Positions 95 through 7,977 of a DNA stretch of 64,000 nucleotides are shown piece after piece. The stretch's first letter is position 1; each line of letters starts with the position of its first letter. The DNA is from Rhodosorus marinus CCMP1338 (Eukaryota; Plantae; Rhodophyta): the NCBI GenBank assembly GCA_029953675.1, contig JAMWBK010000002.1, forward strand, positions 1,364,001-1,428,000. Direction: 5' to 3'. The notes beneath the pieces are model-generated. The model searched no databases. It was not told the DNA's origin and saw only the letters and a program-made list of their open reading frames with translations. Both the position numbers and the translations under genes were made by a program.

Positions 95-2245
95 CTGTTT
101 GAAAATAGCAAGGACAATTTTGACGAGGACTTTGACGAGATAGGAGAGCTTGGAAAAGGCGCTTTTGGAGTATGTATTCTGTGCAAGGACAGACAAACTC
201 AGCAGACCTATGCTGTGAAAAAGGTTCTCAAAGGTACGTCAAGCACTGGATAAGCTGTACATGTCCACAGACCACAACCAATTGAAATCCTTGAGTGAAT
301 CCGCAGGGAGGCTGATTTCGGACTCTATGCGACTCGTCGTCATTACCGAAGTGAAAATCCAGAGTCACCTGAAAGGTCATAAGAACATTGTTCAGATTCT
401 TGATACTTACGAAGACGGTGAATATGTATATATTGTGCAAGAGTTGTGTGAAGGAGGGGATCTGTTTGATCACTTGATTGCTAAAGGTAGAAGCTGCCAC
501 ATTTTGTCAGTTTCCTTCTTCAAGCCGTCGAAGGGCTAGTTTCGCGGAGCGTCAAAACTAACTTGTCATTACGAAAAACAATGCTCAGGTCGTTACTCAG
601 AGAGGGACTCGGCAGATTTGTGTAGAGCGATGCTTATGGCTGTTGAGCACTGCCATAAGAGTGGTGTGTCAGGCGCAGTATCAAGTGGTTGCTTCGGGGA
701 GCAACGTGTTCTCTAACTTGCCAAACGTACTTTGTGTCTTTTTTGTTATAGGTGTGATGCACAGGGACTTGAAACCGGATAACTTTCTGTTTAGCTTTGA
801 AGAACCAAATTCGAAGGATGCGTTATTAAAAACTGCCGATTTTGGACTGTCGTGTTTCCACACACCCGGTACACGGGAGAGTCAACCATGTGGCACCCCC
901 ACGTACATAGCGCCTGAAGTGATCCGCAAGGACTACGATGAGAAAGCGGACATATGGTCCGTAGGTGAGCTTTTTGAGACTTATCTCTCCCTGGATGCAT
1001 GATGTGATTGTTTACTCACGAGACAACAATTTGCTGCGCAATAGGAGTCATCTTGTACATAATGCTAAGTGGAAAAATGCCCTTCTATGGACGAACCGAC
1101 ACGGACTGCCTCCGATCCACTCTCCGCGGTCGATACTCGTTCCAGCATCGGAACTGGCAAACAGTTTCTGATGAAGCGAAAGAGATCGTGGACGCTATGC
1201 TGAGGTACAACCCCAGTGATCGACCTTCAGCCACGGAACTGTTAGGTACGCTGGTTGTTCATACGCAAGCAGTGCTTGTTTTTCGCGCACCTATCTTTGT
1301 TCCGTGGTTGGCTCACCAGAACTTAAACCTCTTTCCGATTAGAATACTCCTGGATCCGTGGAAATGCTTCTACGAAGCCTTTGGTTCAGTCCGTTATAGA
1401 TAACATGAAGCAGTTTTCAAACATGAACAAATTGAAAAAGCGTGCGATGCAGATCATGGCTGAGAGCACGAAACTGCCCAACCTACATGAGGTGAAGAAG
1501 GTTCGTTTCAGCTGTAACAGACCGCCTGGGTTTTAGTCAAGCCGTGTGTATTCCTCTAAACGCGAAGCGCCGCTTCATATCTCAGGCTTTTCGGGAGATG
1601 GACAGGGATGGAAGTGGGACAATCACGGTGGACGAAATGAGAGATGCATTGGAAGCGGTAAACAAGAACTTCTCAGAAGAATACTTTGAGAAACTCTGGG
1701 ATACTTACGATGTCGATGGTACGTAGACAGTGACGGCCTCTTCTTACGTATAGATATAGCTACCTGGGTAAGTTCGCTTTGTGAAGATTCCAATGTTTCC
1801 ACACTCATCGTATTGGAACTACTTAATCACAGGTGATGGCGTAATCGATTACACAGAGTTCCTCACCGCCACTTCGCAGCTGAACAAGCTTTTGACCGCG
1901 GAGAACATGGAGAAAGCGTTCAAGGAGATCGATAAGGATGGTAGCGGAACGATCACTGTTAGTGAGGTGAGAAACATGCTCGAGATCCAATACATAATTT
2001 TGACCCCGCAAATAGAAGTCTCTTATCAGAAGCTGGTACTCTTCGGGACCCCTTAGATTAAGGAAGCGCTCAAGAACTTTAACTGCGACAACCAAATGTT
2101 TGAGCAAATCATGGCAGAAGCCGATAAGAACAAGGACGGCGTAATCGATTATGATGAGTTTGAGGAAATGATGCAAAAGCGTGAAGACCTCCACGTGGCT
2201 GCAGATGAGCTAAAGGGATTACTAAATATTTCAGACCTTGAGTAA
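95..2245 (+). CDS. Calcium-dependent protein kinase (CDPK/CPK), multi-exon; 5' end lies upstream of the window
   Basis: Spliced exons give GKGAFG (95-233), YAVKK, IVQELCEGGDLFD, HRDLKPDNFL, DFGLS, CGTPTYIAPE and DIWSVG. These are followed by the junction MKQFSNMNKLKKRAMQIMAE and four EF-hand loops (DRDGSGTITVDE, DVDGDGVIDYTE, DKDGSGTITVSE, DKNKDGVIDYDE). Stop TAA at 2243-2245. Confidence 0.93.
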
Positions 2246-2612
2246 AATCAGTGCCGCTGCGTGCGGAAAGCGCAGCTTGAGAGATGCTCTGAAGACCGGT
2301 ATTAGTGCCGTCAAAGTTGCTCTAGAATAGGAATCAAAAATTGACCCGCCCTTCCAACGCGCAACGCTACCGACGAGTTCAAAACAAACCTCACGGAAAA
2401 TGAGATTGATAGCTTTATCTTTCAAGTACTCGGGACCTTTCCGACATCAACCTTATGTTAGTGAAGGGACGACTCATCTGAGTTCCCTTTGTACAAGCTC
2501 TTTGCAAACTGTTAATCATCGATTGCAGCAAGCACCCATCCGGCGCTCGATTAGAGTCCGCTTTTGATTATAAATCCAACTCTCCACAATCGACAGAGAT
2601 AATCCATACAAG

Positions 2613-5600
2613 TTACCACGAACAACGACGTTTTAAGGTCGTGTAAAGAAGCTGCTCCGTATTCCATCCCGCGTTCTTAGCTGCATCCAAAAAGGGCCTA
2701 ATTTCCTGGTCAGCTTTTCCTTTTGCTTCGGAGATGGTTTCAAAAGTTACACCTTTTTCTTGTCTCAGGTAGCCAAGGGTGAGCATCGATCGCAGTATGT
2801 CCCTGCTCCTTGCGTCCTCGTGTATCACAATTTTGCATTGCTACAACGACAGCAGAACCGAATTTTAGAGGACCTGGCAACGGCTTCAATGGATTGCCCT
2901 TGGTGCATTTGCTAACCTTTCCCGGGCAGGGTTTACCCTTCTTCGACTTGCAGCCGATTAGGAACTTTTCCTTCCTGAAGATTTCCATATATCGTCTCCA
3001 CTCGTCTTTGGTGGTTACAATCTCTAGCAAGCCTGTGAAGGTCACCCCGTCTTCCCCGATAAGAGGCCGAAGCATAATACGCTCTCGTCGGCTGATGGTG
3101 TGCGGTGTGGGCATGGTCCCCTTGCTGGTATACTCATCGACAATCAGCCCCGTGCGTTGAGGGTTCAGATTCCGGAAAACAACCTAACGTATGGTGATTG
3201 AGTCACAGGCGGTTAGGACTACGCCCCCCAAAATGCTACGTCTCGTCAATTTGAAGGACAAGTGTACCACTCGCAACTCCTGGTGTATTGCAGCGATGTC
3301 CAAAAGCGAAAGGAGCGTGAAAGCGGTGACAATGCTTCTCATCTTAGTCCCGATTACCTTGCTCAGGCTAATACCGAGGCCCATCCCAATCAGTTCAGCA
3401 ATTACGATCTGCGCCTCCCCTTTCGCGGTAATATCTCCAATATTATCTCGTTTCCTTCCAAAACTCCTGTTCCACAGCATGGCAGTATCAGATATACAAA
3501 ACCCTCCTCTCGTCAGCAAGAAGCGTCAAGCACAGTGAGGTAAAAACCAAGAAAAAAAACGGCAACCAGGCCAAAGCCGGAATCCGCGCGCTACCGCTTG
3601 CCAGAGCAGCTGGTTCGACCTTAACAAAGTGTGCTATGGATCAAGGACCTGCCAAAAAAGCTGTTTTCGTTGCCTTACCGATACATCGCATTCCTGGTTG
3701 CAGTTGCTGTTAGCCATGAGACTTGTTTGAACGTAATGGCCATGGTCGCGAAGAAAAGGAAGCTGCTGGGGAATACTTGAGTGAGAATCTCCATCGCATT
3801 TCCCAAACTGTAGACCAAGGCTGAGTTAAATCTCCACCGCTTTGGATCAACGTCAAAATCCTTTCCCTTTGTGCCCGCCCATAGCATCTTCCCCACTCGC
3901 CCGAACCCATTCTTCAACACCCACGCAATTGCCGCAGCCTGACAGAAACAGACGGTGAGGAACCTTTCTAGCTACTGATGTACATAGCTTGCTTCAAGGG
4001 GTGTGCGGGCAGGGGCTTACCTGATTGTTTGCACCAGACTTCAATCCGAGGGCAAGGATTAAAGATTGCGTGCCAAGAACATTCACTGTCGCGGAGATGA
4101 TGCGCTGCACGAAGCGGATTGCCGTGAAGTGGTAGTAGTCGGGAGATACATCATCGGGAAGGAACAAGCGCCTGAGCTGTTCGTACTTGTGTTTAAGCCA
4201 TTGTGCAAGCTCCTCCTGTCAAGGCGTGTCCATCGAAGTGTGCGTTTGTCAGTACAATGCACTGGGAGAAGAGTTGGGCGCACTTGCATCGCACCTCCGG
4301 CGAATTCGTGCTAGTCAAGAAAAGTTGACCTGAATCCTCATCCCACGCTAAGGACCTTCTCTTGGATCCGTTGAGGTCATATGCGGCAACAGTTGCAAGG
4401 CCAACGCTCGCCAAGAACGGGGATGGAACAGCGCCTATTCTCGTTGACGATACACGGTTTTTGGAGAACCGGCTACTTGATGCTTTGGAGACTCTACTGT
4501 TTCTCATTTCCCACCGCAACCTTCGCGTTGACAGGCACCCGACACGCAGCTCTCGTTTAAACAATGCGGCTACCTAGAAACGTTAAAAAGAATGACGTGT
4601 TTAACGGCCACGGTCATTGCCTCCAGAAGCTATGATGTAGTCCATACCCCGAGCTCTCCTTGGGCTATCGCTGCGTGCTCATAGGGTGTACTAGCAGAAA
4701 GAAGAATTTTCTTCAAGCGAAGCAGGCTTTTTCGTTCACAGAGGCTTCCGCGGTAAGTTGGTTGCTGGGCAGAGAGCGAACAGCGCGCCATCTCCGGAGG
4801 AGGGGGCGGCAACCTTTTCGGTGAATCTGCCGACGGCAAAGTTGCCGGCATTGGGGGAAGGCGAACCTCCCTGCATCCTGCAAGACCAAGAACAGAGGAT
4901 GAGTACCCCGCGTTTGAGAAACAGGGACAATCGTTCAATGGGAACGAGTAACACTTGCGAACGCGCCGGCGGTAGTCGACAAACATATTGTTCACTTACC
5001 AGTGTTGAGGTGAAGTTTTTCGTTGTTAGAGTGTTGGTTCATCAAAATCGTTACACTTGGCAATAACATCGCGTATTGGCGGAGAACTAAGCCAGGGCTG
5101 CTGGAAATGCCTATCCACAAATTGGATCCTCTGGCCCTAAGGGCATCCCTCAGATATGTTGCACAAGAAAGGGCGCCCAGAAAATCGCGATCCGCGGCAT
5201 CGAGGACACAAATCGGAATACAGTGCTTGTAATTCTAATTCAAGGTTCAAGGTTCCAGATTCGTAAGCTTCCTTAAACTTGGTCAAAAAGGGCCGAATCT
5301 GCCCCGCTCACCGTGCTAGCACTGAAAGCCGGATTATCATGCAGCCTCAAGTCGCCAATTCTTAAATAAACAATACAAGCATCCGCGGATCGGCGACTAC
5401 TGCTTCTTCCATCAACATTTGGTAGCTTTTGACGCTGCCATTCCCTGCTGGGCTCCGTTAGGATCCGATTTCTAGGTCTACGAGGCAGGTGCGATTGGAA
5501 AAGGCTCGAGCGATTTCGATTCCGTCCCGAATCAAATTGTGCGCAGACGCCGCTCGCCCCACTTCCATAGATCGGAGCTGGTGGGGCGAAAGCAAAGTCA

Positions 5601-5623
5601 TGAGTACTTGAGCAGGAAGGCAT
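2613..5623 (-). CDS. Fusion protein: transit-peptide-like N-terminus + truncated DNA photolyase/cryptochrome domain + RUS/DUF647 domain; 9 exons, about 734 aa
   Basis: Exons 5623-5312, 5234-5000, 4877-4648, 4573-4295, 4215-4021, 3938-3679, 3466-3268, 3183-2917 and 2840-2613 join in one open frame across GT-AG introns. Photolyase-like motifs: IVYLRIGDLRLHDNPAF, CIPICVLD, LRARGSNL, CERKSLLRL, LRVGCLSTRRL. RUS motifs: LFLPDDVSPDYYHF, AWVLKNGFGRVGKMLWA, FDVDPKRWRF, TRNAMYRSF, NIGDITAKGEAQ, NLNPQRTGLIV. Confidence 0.85.
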
Positions 5624-7977
5624 TTAGATGCTCTCCGCCAAACAACCCGTCGGTTGAGAGCTCCTGAAGACCTTGGAAGCCAAGCACAACCGACGAAGAG
5701 AACCACAAGAAGAAAAATTTCAATACATACCCCAACGCTCTCTTCGGTGGATAGCGAATCCTTCAAAGAACAATGGGTCCCGATCTCAATTCACAAGAAC
5801 AATTGCATTCCCATCTGGACCGATTCCAGACTACCAATACATATATATACACAATATATATATAACACTGACGACCCATTGCATCGAAAACACCGTTCCC
5901 CTACCTGTCTCAAACCAGACCGCACTCCGACCACAGAAACATTATCAAACGTAGCAAAACATCACGAGAGCATCGACCATATCCTCCAGTCCGAGACCAA
6001 CTAGTCCAAAAGAAAAAAAAAAAGGCACACAACCCAAACCCGGCTCACCAAACCAGAAACCAACAACCACTCAACCAAAACAACCTATCAACGAACAGAA
6101 CCCCCCCAAACCCTAGAAAATCAGGCTTCACGATCTCCCACAAAACCAAAACCATAAATCAACGATGTGCTTATCTCAAGTTCTACCATAGCCAACTTCG
6201 TCCCGTCGCTCTCTCGAAAGCTTATCCCTTTCCTCCCCTTCCACTCCCTTATTCAACGTGGACGACAACACACCTTTAAGAGGCCAAAAATCCCACTGCT
6301 AATCGGCGTTCCAACAGATCGTCACTACCAAAAAAAAGTTCAAGCAAAACATGGCAAACTGCCTTCCTTCTCCATGACCACAACCGATCGAAACTGCTCA
6401 AAAAACCCAACAACTCTCCTTCAGCGGCCCACCCGTACCTTTTACTAAAACAGAAGCTCTCTACAAAGTATCTAGGCTTATACGAAACGAACAGGCCGCT
6501 AAAATTAAACCTCAAAATGTTTTTTGTATCGTTAGTATTTTCTGGTTTACAGTGTGTAGCTGTATAAGTCCCTGATTCGAGTCATCCATATATCAATCAA
6601 TTAGTGTATCTGATATTTATTGAAATATCGTAATATGATGTTAAATGACTGAATTATGGTATGACACTTTGTTGGGCCTGGCGAGAGCGCGTTGAAACAT
6701 TGTTGTAGAATCGAGCGATGGTGCTTTTCTACTATTTTAGAGCAATAGGTTTCTTAATTTTGGATGATTTTGTTAGATATGGATCATTTGTAGTTTAAGA
6801 AACTTTTCAGCTTCTTTTTAAGCCGCCAAAAATACAGATTTAGGGTTTGGGGGGGGACGACATCTTAAGGCCGAAATGGTTTGTCGTCTTTCGAGTACCC
6901 CCCTGCCATCTCACTTGCACCGTTAGCAATCTAGAGTTCGAGTAAGAAAAAATGTAGAATGAAAATAATTGTTCGAGAATCGGAACCCCTGTATTTTGCT
7001 CGGTGGTCGTATTAGTCAATTGCTGCGTCCGAAAATTGAGTTTGTTCAATTGTATATTCACACGTGTCCTAAGCGAAACTCTGATGATATTAGGTTTACA
7101 TAGAAAGTCCTTCTCTCCGCTCAGCCTTAATAACTTCATTTTTGGTGTGTCACGCGTACCAATTCCTGGGAACAGATTGTGAAGGAAAGGCGTGGTTGAT
7201 CACTGTATTGGCCCGAATGTCGCGTTCGAGTACTCTCTCTTCCCGTTTCCAGTGTGGCTGGATATACGAGTCGGAATCTGAGGAACATAAATAACAAAAC
7301 GCCAAGCATGGCCGTAGACATCGCTTATCTGCTCTCCGTCAACGAAGTTTCATTCACTACAATACTCAGAACGTGCATTCATCACTGTCCTCTGCTCCCG
7401 GCCCAGCGTATCGCTTCCAACTCCCAACCCCCCCAATCTCCCCAAACGACGTCTTCTAATTTTTCGTATATACATTAATAAATTAATGTATAAATAAGAT
7501 TTCTCCCTTTTTCCTTTGAATTCATATATTCAAAAGTAATGAGGAAAAACTAGGCATTTGTGACGATTCTAAAAGTAGACCAACATCGTGCTTAAAAATG
7601 GCTCCTAATGGCACGCTGTGGAAACTGAACCTTTTTTTGTGATAGAAGTTTTCTTCCTGAAGAAGGTCGGGTTTGGTTGGGGGCTGTGCGTTTCCCATTG
7701 AAACGCCTTTTTTAGCGAAGAGAGGTGGGGGGGTAAGCGGGGGGGGGGGGCGGGAGGGGGAAGCAGGAGGACGAGGAATTGCTGGAAGCGACGATTAAGA
7801 GAGGTTGTTTTCGGTTTACGCTTGGGAATATTTTTCTGGGCTGGGGTTTGTGAGGACTGGATTGAGTAGCGGGTGTGCGTTTGATCAATCTTGGTAGATC
7901 GTCGGGAAGGGGGTGAGACGTGCGGTAGATGAGGGTGGATGTGGAGACTTGTTCTTCTCGATTGATGAAGTGTTACG

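What the first reader, a model, noticed from the sequence alone, without database searches (positions are those of the whole stretch)
2613..5623. Single spliced gene fusing a photolyase/cryptochrome-like domain to a RUS (DUF647) UV-B/vitamin-B6 domain
The ORF track shows only fragments. Eight GT-AG introns (77, 122, 74, 79, 82, 212, 84, 76 nt) join them in one frame of about 734 aa. The two linking introns (4647-4574 and 4294-4216, the latter with a TACTGAC branch site) have normal size and phase, and no stop separates the domains. Established: photolyase/cryptochrome proteins bind light-harvesting chromophores, and plant RUS proteins are standalone and genetically tied to UV-B sensitivity and pyridoxal-phosphate homeostasis. 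Inference: a plastid-targeted (Ser/Arg-rich N-terminus) protein that couples a chromophore-binding module directly to a RUS effector, i.e. a candidate light/UV-responsive vitamin-B6 protection system. I do not know of a characterised protein with this architecture, but I could not search databases.
Basis: partly seen in the sequence, partly recalled or inferred. Interest (0 to 1): 0.85.

Follow-up and report, generated by a model that had tools for sequence, protein, structure and literature searches.

The report
Red-algal RUS protein with photolyase remnant
This is a real, expressed Rhodosorus marinus gene, with counterparts in all red-algal classes sampled, that joins the front half of a photolyase (without its flavin-binding half) to a RUS membrane protein, giving an uncharacterised lead on how RUS proteins work but probably not a light sensor.

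Summary
The eight GT-AG introns give a 734-aa protein identical to NCBI KAJ8907618.1 (Rhodosorus marinus NDN08_007728). It is gapless against a transcriptome-derived R. marinus protein across all eight junctions. Orthologues in Gracilariopsis and Galdieria are single uninterrupted ORFs, so the fusion is not a gene-model artefact.

The N-terminal half is homologous to photolyase/cryptochrome proteins (family profile against PDB E=1e-12; Foldseek hits only this family, TM 0.60-0.68). It stops just after the 'FGxxS' helix, so the FAD-binding helical domain is missing. The residues that hold the 8-HDF antenna in the closest solved structure are not conserved.

The C-terminal half is a standard RUS protein (PF04884, 1.6e-58, plus PF24160). 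The fusion occurs in every red-algal class sampled, including Cyanidiales. It is absent from the closest non-red orthologues examined (named examples: a chromerid, brown algae, diatoms).

The N-module is under purifying but relaxed selection (dN/dS 0.26, against 0.03 for RUS). The most likely reading is a plastid membrane RUS half-transporter-like protein with a non-photochemical, fold-retaining accessory module. The light-sensor idea is not supported. I found no paper describing this architecture.

The parts
2613..5623 (-). Whole CDS of R. marinus NDN08_007728: 9 exons, 8 GT-AG introns, 734 aa plus stop
   Evidence: model. (exact match to KAJ8907618.1). (gapless match to the transcript-derived protein across all junctions).
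5390..5623 (-). Presequence, aa 1-78: low-acidic, Ser/Arg-rich, with an N-terminal Phe motif (FAFAPPAP). Probable plastid transit peptide.
   Evidence: 30 of 42 orthologues with complete N-termini have Phe within the first 15 residues, mostly as A-F-V/L, and all have presequences of 37-142 aa. AF2 pLDDT is below 50 for residues 1-59 and 67-78. Targeting itself is an inference from what is known of red-lineage transit peptides.
4415..5386 (-). Truncated photolyase/cryptochrome (CPF) module, aa 80-312. It comprises the Rossmann-like alpha/beta domain (PF00875 hit aa 85-171, window 5371-5034), the Pro-rich interdomain linker, the 'GE..A...L' helix and the 'ELRVGCLS' helix. The span includes introns 1-3.
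   Evidence: Pfam. (profile against PDB, CraCRY E=1e-12, profile 4-205 aligned to chain 6-265). (AF2 pLDDT 87.9; Foldseek TM 0.60-0.68, CPF hits only). (family HMM, E=5e-58).
4574..4647 (-). Intron 3 (74 nt), inside the CPF module.
   Evidence: The junction reads ...AQGELG|VAALFK... in the transcript protein. It is spliced in all four MMETSP isoforms.
4216..4294 (-). Intron 4 (79 nt), between the conserved pre-RUS segment and the RUS domain. CTGAC lies 37 nt from the acceptor.
   Evidence: The junction reads ...TNSPE|EELAQW... in the transcript protein.
4183..4438 (-). Conserved segment outside PF04884, aa 305-363: a hydrophobic stretch, the AAYDLNGSKRRSLAWDE beta-hairpin and an amphipathic helix. 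The span includes intron 4.
   Evidence: The equivalent segment has dN/dS 0.014 in a Gracilariopsis pair.
3121..4182 (-). RUS / UVB_sens_prot domain (PF04884), aa 364-591. Six long helices. The span includes introns 5-7.
   Evidence: 1.6e-58. (helices 377-407, 414-444, 449-472, 474-504, 512-542, 546-572). (K+R count 17 on the N/C-terminal side against 2 on the other side).
2616..3120 (-). RUS C-terminal alpha/beta domain, aa 592-734 (PF24160 hit aa 663-725). The span includes intron 8.
   Evidence: 21.2 bits; cutoff 20.7. (pLDDT 74-90 for most of 620-720). dN/dS is 0.030 in the Gracilariopsis pair.

Best explanation
The locus is one expressed nuclear gene of Rhodosorus marinus. Its product has four parts: (i) a presequence of about 78 aa that looks like a red-lineage plastid transit peptide; (ii) a module of about 230 aa derived from a photolyase/cryptochrome; (iii) the six-helix RUS/DUF647 membrane domain; and (iv) the RUS C-terminal domain. 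The photolyase-derived module keeps the alpha/beta domain, the interdomain linker and the first helices of the helical domain. It has lost the whole FAD-binding and catalytic part. Shown: the gene structure, the transcript, homology of both halves, loss of the FAD domain, presence in every red-algal class sampled, and purifying but relaxed selection on the N-module. Inferred: the protein sits in a plastid membrane, as plant RUS1 does, and pairs with a second RUS domain as a half-transporter-like unit linked to vitamin-B6 homeostasis. The N-module and the C-terminal domain lie on the same, positive-inside (probably stromal) face. The N-module most likely works without photochemistry, as a folded accessory domain for protein docking, dimer organisation or binding of an unidentified small ligand. 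It is unlikely to be a photolyase, a cryptochrome or an antenna-chromophore sensor.
For: Gene and transcript. The model is an exact match to KAJ8907618.1. It is gapless against the MMETSP transcript protein across all eight junctions. Three further MMETSP isoforms (425, 504 and 515 aa) all carry the N-module plus the start of RUS and differ only by retention or alternative splicing of introns 5 and 6. A 57%-identical relative sits on a 2766-nt mRNA-like contig with one ORF. The Gracilariopsis chorda and Galdieria partita orthologues are single uninterrupted ORFs in genomic DNA.

CPF homology. All 22 N-modules hit PF00875 (best 6e-11) and none hits an FAD-binding model. The family profile against PDB gives 1e-12 to CraCRY, ending at the LSPYLKFGCLS motif. 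The AF2 model has pLDDT 87.9 and pTM 0.82. Every listed Foldseek match is a CPF protein, with TMq 0.60-0.68 but TMt about 0.32, meaning only the first part of the target is covered.

No cofactor signature. CraCRY R55 aligns mostly to Leu. K258 aligns to a variable position. D40 and Y56 are variable. The antenna loop is deleted in 20 of 22 sequences (contact residues taken from PMC6125616).

Selection. dN/dS is 0.26 for the N-module, 0.031 for the RUS TM domain and 0.030 for the C-terminal domain. Of the 44 differences between the two R. marinus sequences, 39 lie in aa 1-338.

Distribution. The N-module HMM hits only red-algal RUS proteins, including Cyanidiales, Porphyridium, Rhodosorus, probable Bangiales and Florideophyceae. 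It gives no significant hit in any non-red orthologue (64 of the 67 sequences without a significant hit; two of the other three are short fragments scoring like red-algal RUS, and P0205 is full length with only a weak hit).

RUS half. PF04884 scores 198.7 bits. There are six helices with a 17 to 2 K+R asymmetry. Published background: PF04884 is placed in the MFS clan and RUS1/RUS2 dimerise (bioRxiv 10.1101/2024.04.13.589297). OsRUS1 localises to the chloroplast membrane (PMC5059228).
Against: Nothing here measures localisation, topology, dimerisation, ligand binding or any light response. The alpha/beta domain could hold a chromophore or nucleotide in a non-canonical way that sequence comparison cannot see. 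I checked only the 8-HDF site of one reference structure, and alignment around beta4/alpha4 is unreliable. The hydrophobic stretch at aa 305-327 could be a seventh membrane pass in Rhodosorus, which would put the N-module on the opposite face. AF2 is poor there (pLDDT below 50). The inter-domain arrangement is not trustworthy (pTM 0.37). The transporter role of RUS itself is a published hypothesis, not an established fact. The dN/dS figures come from a single species pair.
Confidence: 0.6

Rival explanations
1. The N-module still binds a light-harvesting chromophore of antenna type (MTHF, 8-HDF, FMN or FAD) and passes a light or UV signal directly to the RUS domain, making a light-gated vitamin-B6 protection system.
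For: The alpha/beta domain is the part of photolyases that houses antenna chromophores, and it is predicted to fold with high confidence. The module has been kept in every red-algal class sampled and is under purifying selection. RUS mutants in plants are UV-B hypersensitive and are rescued by vitamin B6.
Against: There is no FAD-binding domain. The 8-HDF contact residues and the antenna loop are not conserved. The canonical MTHF site of class I and DASH enzymes uses the missing helical domain (established knowledge). The invariant residues (R93, D96, N97, L132, P206, P209, E230, L237, G271) are generic CPF fold residues, not pocket residues. Selection is relaxed relative to RUS. An antenna without an acceptor flavin has no known signalling photochemistry.
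Confidence: 0.12
2. The N-module is an evolutionary relic. A photolyase gene became fused and decapitated, and what remains serves only as a spacer or import-competent filler with no function of its own.
For: It evolves much faster than the RUS half: 11.5% against 1.3% amino-acid divergence between the two R. marinus sequences, and dN/dS 0.26 against 0.03. Identity among red algae is only 18-31%. Cofactor residues are lost. The closest non-red orthologues lack the module.
Against: dN/dS of 0.26 is well below 1, whereas the neighbouring presequence is about 1.2. Length, secondary structure and fold-defining residues are retained from Cyanidiales to Florideophyceae. AF2 predicts a compact domain at pLDDT about 90 from a shallow alignment. 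No sampled full-length red-algal orthologue has lost it.
Confidence: 0.15
3. Gene-model artefact. Two adjacent genes, a photolyase-like pseudogene and a standalone RUS gene, have been wrongly joined.
For: The ORF track shows only fragments. The single-sequence PF00875 score is borderline.
Against: A transcript-derived 734-aa protein spans both halves, and all isoforms carry both. Intron-less orthologues encode both halves in one ORF. An mRNA-like contig of a relative has a single ORF.
Confidence: 0.01

Closest known systems
Plant ROOT UV-B SENSITIVE proteins (Arabidopsis RUS1/RUS2, rice OsRUS1; Pfam PF04884 UVB_sens_prot/DUF647 plus PF24160)
   Same: Strong PF04884 match and a C-terminal PF24160 match. 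Six-helix membrane domain. Plastid-type presequence. NCBI names the red-algal orthologues 'RUS1' or 'RUS2, chloroplastic'.
   Different: It carries a CPF-derived module of about 230 aa in front of the RUS domain. According to the Pfam summary quoted in the preprint read, described RUS proteins usually have PF04884 as their only domain. I did not determine which Arabidopsis paralogue is orthologous. No function has been tested in any red alga.
PPL/PHR2 subfamily of the cryptochrome/photolyase family (Arabidopsis At2g47590 = GERALT)
   Same: It is a plastid-lineage CPF protein with a truncated FAD-binding domain. [quoted passage not shown] Short CPFs of this kind are among the best non-fused matches of the N-module profile.
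   Different: The red-algal module is cut even shorter, ending about 20-40 aa after the FGxxS helix. It has none of the PPL motif cores ppl1-3 (0 of 27). It is fused to a membrane protein. A specific relationship could not be shown: phmmer top-10 lists are 69% truncated CPFs against a 63% base rate; NJ distances are saturated with no bootstrap support; hhalign scores are similar for all CPF groups.
CPF alpha/beta domain fused to an alpha/beta-hydrolase (Riccia fluitans KAL2609295.1). From memory, this is the same type as Arabidopsis At4g25290.
   Same: It is another Archaeplastida protein that keeps the photolyase N-domain without the FAD domain and fuses it to an unrelated module. One member (P0112) grouped with the red-algal modules in the NJ tree.
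   Different: The partner domain is a hydrolase, not RUS. The grouping has no bootstrap support. At4g25290 is uncharacterised. I did not verify the equivalence with At4g25290 by sequence.
Chlamydomonas animal-like cryptochrome CraCRY / (6-4) photolyases (PDB 5zm0, 6fn0-6fn3)
   Same: Best solved-structure match by sequence profile (E=1e-12) and by fold (TMq 0.60-0.65, prob 1.00). The motifs WxR.G.LRL.DN, GGE..A...L and L.FG.LS are shared.
   Different: CraCRY has the full FAD-binding domain, a Trp/Tyr electron-transfer chain, an 8-HDF pocket and DNA-repair activity (PMC6125616). The red-algal module has none of these sequence features.

Membership tests
RUS / DUF647 (PF04884) | UVB_sens_prot domain above the Pfam gathering score | tested here: met
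   198.7 bits against a cutoff of 28.3; aa 364-591; profile positions 9-240 of 241.
RUS / DUF647 (PF04884) | RUS C-terminal domain (PF24160) | tested here: met
   21.2 bits against a cutoff of 20.7, which is marginal for this sequence. The match is stronger in some orthologues, for example 38.2 bits in Galdieria partita.
RUS / DUF647 (PF04884) | Polytopic membrane domain: six helices, half-MFS-like | tested here: inconclusive
   AF2 gives six long helices between aa 377 and 572, but pLDDT there is only about 45-75. Hydropathy clearly supports only some of them. The K+R count of 17 to 2 is consistent with an even-numbered topology.
RUS / DUF647 (PF04884) | Plastid membrane localisation and pairing with a second RUS protein | not testable with these tools
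   Only a presequence resembling a red-lineage transit peptide could be shown. Localisation and dimerisation are known for plant RUS proteins.
RUS / DUF647 (PF04884) | Role in UV-B sensitivity and vitamin-B6 homeostasis | not testable with these tools
   This is a genetic phenotype described in Arabidopsis only.
Cryptochrome/photolyase family (CPF) | N-terminal alpha/beta (Rossmann-like) photolyase domain, PF00875 | tested here: met
   The single sequence is borderline: 25.1 bits for the full protein, 26.6 for aa 1-306 and 27.2 for the isolated module, against a cutoff of 26.6. All 22 family members hit PF00875, best 6.1e-11. Family profile against PDB gives 1e-12. Foldseek gives prob 1.00 and TMq up to 0.68.
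Cryptochrome/photolyase family (CPF) | FAD-binding helical domain with the FAD pocket and Trp electron-transfer chain | tested here: not met
   No FAD-binding Pfam model is hit by any of the 22 members at E up to 1. Alignment to CraCRY ends at chain residue 265 of about 500. Foldseek covers only about a third of each target (TMt about 0.32). The RUS-specific sequence begins about 50 aa after the FGxxS helix.
Cryptochrome/photolyase family (CPF) | Antenna-chromophore pocket (8-HDF type, as in CraCRY) | tested here: not met
   R55 aligns to Leu in 12 of 22 sequences. K258 aligns to a variable position (Arg in 7 of 22). D40 and Y56 are variable. The F43/Y49 antenna loop is absent in 20 of 22. Positions after beta4 are variable or gapped. 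MTHF-type sites were not tested; they depend on the missing domain.
Cryptochrome/photolyase family (CPF) | Light-driven DNA repair or photoreceptor activity | not testable with these tools
Activity is unlikely given the missing FAD domain.
PPL/PHR2 subfamily | Truncated FAD-binding domain | tested here: met
   The domain is truncated, and more severely than in PPL. The family alignment ends about 40 aa after the FGxxS helix, whereas PPL-like proteins have tails of 30-95 aa.
PPL/PHR2 subfamily | [quoted passage not shown] 2022, PMC9498864) | tested here: not met
   None of 27 fused proteins has any of the three motif cores. Among motif-selected PPL-like proteins the counts are 15, 8 and 13 of 19.
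PPL/PHR2 subfamily | Phylogenetic placement inside the PPL / CRY-DASH clade | tested here: inconclusive
   Distances are saturated at about 2 substitutions per site. No bootstrap support was obtained in 60 replicates. hhalign scores are similar for all CPF groups, 165-226.

The most novel reading that the evidence does not exclude
The pan-rhodophyte fusion is a 'Rosetta stone'. FAD-domain-less photolyase modules (red-algal RUS N-module, PPL/PHR2/GERALT, the hydrolase-fused type) would be physical partners or regulators of RUS membrane proteins in plastids of all Archaeplastida. They would sense a flavin-, folate-, nucleotide- or B6-type ligand, or light through a non-canonical cofactor. This would explain at the molecular level why loss of RUS makes plants UV-B hypersensitive and why loss of GERALT blocks chloroplast biogenesis.
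Probability: 0.1. Interest if true: 0.8.

Novelty: new variant of a known kind. Interest (0 to 1): 0.45.

Why it matters
RUS/DUF647 proteins occur widely across eukaryotes, and in plants several of them are needed for normal development. They still have no established molecular function. The current ideas are a half-MFS vitamin-B6 transporter or a regulator of PLP enzymes. An ancient, lineage-wide fusion to a second domain is one of the few sequence-level clues available. It says the RUS core works next to a folded photolyase-derived module on the same membrane face. It also adds a third family (after PPL/PHR2 and the hydrolase-fused type) to the little-studied set of plastid-lineage proteins that kept the photolyase front half and discarded the flavin half. 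This suggests the fragment has a function independent of FAD. Surveys of the cryptochrome/photolyase family that I could read do not list these proteins, and I found no paper containing both 'DUF647' and 'photolyase'. The practical value is a set of cheap experiments: cofactor analysis of the module, deletion in a transformable red alga, and interaction tests between plant RUS and truncated photolyase-like proteins. It is not evidence for a new photoreceptor.

Tried and rejected
1. Two-gene or artefact model: rejected on transcript and intron-less orthologue evidence.

2. DNA for the MMETSP transcript protein P0001, wanted for a within-species dN/dS: not on record. I used a Gracilariopsis pair instead.

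3. Placing the N-module within the CPF family:
- phmmer top-10 lists showed no enrichment beyond the base rate.
- An NJ tree recovered all 27 fused modules on one side of a split together with P0112, but distances are saturated.
- Bootstrap gave no support: 0 of 60 replicates recovered the fused clade.
- hhalign against four CPF groups gave similar scores.
The origin remains unresolved.

4. PPL/PHR2 membership by published motifs: not met.

5. Seeing plant RUS proteins, to decide which Arabidopsis paralogue is orthologous: both homologue searches were filled by red-algal and red-plastid-lineage sequences, so orthology was not assigned.

6. Full-length AF2 model: the inter-domain geometry is unusable (pTM 0.37) and the RUS helices have low confidence. 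Foldseek with the full model returned only CPF hits.

7. Literature: no paper holds both 'DUF647' and 'photolyase'. The four papers with 'root UV-B sensitive' plus 'photolyase' appear from their titles and abstracts to be Arabidopsis UV-B studies unrelated to a fusion. The supplements of the Deppisch 2022 CPF survey contain no RUS-named entries.

8. My first align_proteins call used a wrong one-base reference and is meaningless.
Full report
**Observation**

Reading the minus strand of window 2300-6000 and testing the stated intron lengths recovers exactly one consistent set of eight GT-AG introns: 5311-5235, 4999-4878, 4647-4574, 4294-4216, 4020-3939, 3678-3467, 3267-3184 and 2916-2841. Joining the nine exons from ATG 5623 to the stop at 2613 gives a 2205-nt frame of 734 aa. 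The CTGAC branch-like site in the 79-nt intron is present 37 nt from the acceptor.

The product is identical to NCBI KAJ8907618.1, hypothetical protein NDN08_007728 of Rhodosorus marinus, on a 3.48-Mb contig.

An independent transcriptome-derived R. marinus protein (MMETSP; UniRef A0A7S2ZP82; 734 aa) aligns without a gap at 94.0% identity and reads the same residues across all eight junctions.

**One gene or two**

Three further MMETSP isoforms fall in the same 90% cluster (425, 504 and 515 aa).
- The 425-aa form ends in read-through of intron 5 (…NNQVSPC…).
- The 504-aa form stops at the first codon of intron 6.
- The 515-aa form reads into alternative sequence at the same junction.

All of them contain the complete N-terminal half and the beginning of the RUS domain, so introns 1-4, including both 'linking' introns, are spliced in every isoform. 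No transcript with a separate RUS start was seen.

A 57%-identical relative lies on a 2766-nt mRNA-like contig with one ORF. The Gracilariopsis chorda orthologue (748 aa) lies within a single uninterrupted ORF in genomic DNA. The Galdieria partita orthologue (853 aa; PF00875+PF04884+PF24160) is called as a single-exon gene. The fusion is real.

**C-terminal half**

PF04884 (UVB_sens_prot/DUF647) matches aa 364-591 at 1.6e-58, and PF24160 (RUS C-terminal domain) matches marginally. AF2 predicts six long helices between aa 377 and 572, followed by an alpha/beta domain. Lys+Arg counts in the flanks and loops are 17 on the side of the N- and C-termini against 2 on the other side. By the positive-inside rule this puts both extramembrane domains on the same face.

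The segment just before PF04884 (hydrophobic stretch plus the AAYD(V/L)NG…W(D)E hairpin) is not covered by Pfam. It is nevertheless the most constrained part of the protein.

Published background read here:
- PF04884 is placed in the MFS clan as a half-transporter-like domain.
- Arabidopsis RUS1 and RUS2 interact through it.
- rus phenotypes are partly rescued by vitamin B6 (bioRxiv 10.1101/2024.04.13.589297).
- OsRUS1 goes to the chloroplast membrane (PMC5059228).

**N-terminal half**

For the single sequence, PF00875 is borderline: 25.1, 26.6 or 27.2 bits depending on the fragment scanned, against a cutoff of 26.6. The best phmmer hit in the PDB is weak (E=0.045).

An alignment of 22 red-algal N-modules (A2) settles the question:
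- All 22 hit PF00875, best 6.1e-11.
- The profile hits cryptochromes and photolyases in the PDB at up to 1e-12. The alignment to CraCRY runs from chain residue 6 to 265. That covers the alpha/beta domain, the linker, the GGE..A…L helix and the LSPYLKFGCLS motif, which reads RELRVGCLS in this protein.
- AF2 on the module alone gives pLDDT 87.9 and pTM 0.82.
- Every listed Foldseek match in the PDB is a CPF protein. TM is 0.60-0.68 normalised to the query but about 0.32 normalised to the target, so only the first part of a photolyase is present (the same picture with the full model).
- No member hits any FAD-binding Pfam model.

The module is therefore a photolyase cut shortly after the first helices of the helical domain. 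The FAD pocket, the Trp chain and the substrate site do not exist in it.

**Antenna site**

I took the 8-HDF contacts of CraCRY from PMC6125616 and read the matching columns of A2.
- R55 corresponds mostly to Leu.
- K258 corresponds to a variable position.
- D40 and Y56 are variable.
- The antenna loop carrying F43 and Y49 is deleted in 20 of 22 sequences.
- The positions after beta4, where the ribityl-binding acidic residues sit, are variable or gapped.

The invariant residues of the family are R93, D96, L132, P206, P209, E230, L237 and G271; N97 is nearly invariant. These are the generic fold-signature residues of all CPF proteins. The fold is conserved but no known cofactor site is. This test covers one reference pocket only, and the alignment near beta4/alpha4 is unreliable.

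**Selection**

Between the two R. marinus sequences, 39 of the 44 substitutions lie in aa 1-338. For G. chorda against a close relative assembled from SRR24820228 (87% identity, both intron-less), Nei-Gojobori dN/dS values are:

| Region | dN/dS |
|---|---|
| Presequence | 1.19 |
| CPF-like module | 0.26 |
| Pre-RUS segment | 0.014 |
| RUS membrane domain | 0.031 |
| C-terminal domain | 0.030 |

The module is under purifying selection but about eight times more relaxed than the RUS core. This is one species pair.

**Distribution**

A profile search of 1.84 billion representative proteins with A2 gave 2785 hits at E up to 0.001. Among the best 150, the only ones that also carry a RUS domain are red-algal.

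A profile search with the RUS half returned 361 proteins. A local search with the A2 HMM found the N-module in the full-length red-algal proteins of the top-scoring group:
- Gracilariopsis, Chondrus, Agarophyton, Gracilaria, Eucheuma, Porphyridium and Rhodosorus;
- GC-rich sequences that are probably from Bangiales;
- more weakly, Cyanidiales (1.4e-10 for the unnamed cyanidialean-like P0202; 1.9e-5 for Cyanidiococcus; Galdieria 1.3e-21).

It was absent from all of the closest non-red orthologues (Vitrella, Ectocarpus, Phaeothamnion, diatoms, Rhizochromulina, Triparma). Of the 67 sequences without a significant hit, 64 are non-red orthologues, two (P0188, P0197) are short fragments that score like red-algal RUS, and one (P0205) is a full-length cyanidialean-like protein with only a weak hit (E=0.11). 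P0207, a cyanidialean-like sequence with a truncated N-terminus, gave no hit at all.

The fusion is thus found throughout, and so far only in, Rhodophyta. Green-lineage and glaucophyte RUS proteins were not reached by my searches, so their status rests on the statement in the literature that PF04884 usually stands alone.

**Origin of the module**

The best non-fused matches are enriched in short CPF proteins that end 30-95 aa after the FGxxS helix. Some of these carry the published PPL/PHR2 motifs. Others are complete genes of about 340 aa with red-type presequences. CPF-N plus alpha/beta-hydrolase fusions also appear (Riccia fluitans).

PPL/PHR2 proteins are known for a truncated FAD domain. 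The Arabidopsis member GERALT is stromal and needed for chloroplast biogenesis (bioRxiv 10.1101/2024.08.16.608208; PMC9498864).

A specific relationship could not be shown:
- phmmer top-10 lists match the base rate.
- NJ distances are saturated and bootstrap support is nil.
- hhalign scores are similar for all groups.
- None of 27 fused proteins has a PPL motif core.

**Targeting**

The first 78 residues are low in acidic residues and rich in Ser and Arg. AF2 gives pLDDT below 50 for residues 1-59 and 67-78, which suggests disorder. They contain F10/F12 in 'FAFAPPAP'. Thirty of 42 orthologues with complete N-termini have a Phe within the first 15 residues, typically as A-F-V/L. This matches what is known of red-lineage and glaucophyte transit peptides. 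That last point comes from my own knowledge and was not tested here.

**Interpretation**

Shown:
- one expressed gene;
- CPF homology of the N-half and loss of its FAD domain;
- a canonical RUS C-half;
- presence in every red-algal class sampled;
- relaxed purifying selection on the N-module.

Inferred:
- plastid membrane location;
- pairing as a half-transporter-like unit;
- both soluble domains on the stromal face;
- a non-photochemical accessory role for the N-module (docking, dimer organisation or binding of an unidentified ligand).

A pure relic is disfavoured by dN/dS of 0.26, by retention of the fold residues, and by retention of the module across all red-algal classes sampled.

**Novelty**

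The protein is in public databases, where automatic annotation detects both domains. I found no paper that describes or discusses the architecture. It is best filed as a new, lineage-wide variant of the RUS family and as a third kind of FAD-domain-less photolyase derivative in the plastid lineage. Interest is moderate. It is a useful lead for the unknown mechanism of RUS and of truncated photolyase-like proteins, not a new photoreceptor.

Noticed in passing
window 1781-2245 (+): Two ORF fragments with clear EF-hand matches (PF00036, 1.7e-11 and 1.3e-9). They look like the 3' exons of a calmodulin- or CDPK-like gene that converges on the 3' end of the RUS gene, with about 370 nt between the two stops.
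   Followed up: partly
window 4020-3939 and 3678-3467 (introns 5 and 6): The MMETSP transcriptome of R. marinus holds intron-retention or alternative-splice isoforms of this gene (425, 504 and 515 aa). They would encode the photolyase-like module plus one to four RUS helices. They are probably unspliced or NMD-type RNAs, but a soluble N-module product is conceivable.
   Followed up: partly
window 4438-4183 (aa 305-363): The segment between the photolyase-like module and PF04884 (hydrophobic stretch, AAYDLNGSKRRSLAWDE hairpin, amphipathic helix) is covered by no Pfam model. It is the most constrained part of the protein (dN/dS 0.014 in a Gracilariopsis pair). Whether the hydrophobic stretch crosses the membrane is unresolved.
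   Followed up: partly
related proteins P0039, P0057, P0086, P0092, P0112, P0129, P0164, P0169: A family fuses the photolyase alpha/beta domain, without the FAD domain, to an alpha/beta-hydrolase. P0039 is from the liverwort Riccia fluitans. P0057 has a red-type 'MPAF' presequence. From memory this is the Arabidopsis At4g25290 type, which is uncharacterised.
   Followed up: partly
related proteins P0028 (Closterium sp. NIES-68), P0042, P0053, P0055, P0071: Proteins of 700-860 aa carry a PPL/PHR2-type truncated photolyase at the C-terminus behind an N-terminal region of 350-490 aa. In several of them that region contains a P-loop-like motif (GPAGAGKS). Pfam gives no domain for the N-terminal part of P0028.
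   Followed up: no
L005/L006 1001-2020 and L007 1001-2071: Stand-alone truncated photolyase-like genes of about 340-356 aa are complete single-exon genes. In two different assemblies each lies next to a Not3 (CCR4-NOT) gene, which suggests conserved synteny in an unidentified, probably red-algal, lineage.
   Followed up: no
related protein P0211 (Vitrella brassicaformis, aa 1-230): The chromerid orthologue of this RUS protein lacks the photolyase-like module. It has a different N-terminal extension of about 230 aa with no Pfam match. Brown-algal orthologues owe their extra length to low-complexity inserts in the C-terminal half.
   Followed up: no
L001 3001-3255 against L004 501-755 (presequence of the Gracilariopsis orthologues): The presequence evolves neutrally or faster (dN/dS about 1.2) while the rest of the gene is constrained. 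This is typical of transit peptides, but it could also mean the annotated start codon lies too far upstream in these species.
   Followed up: no
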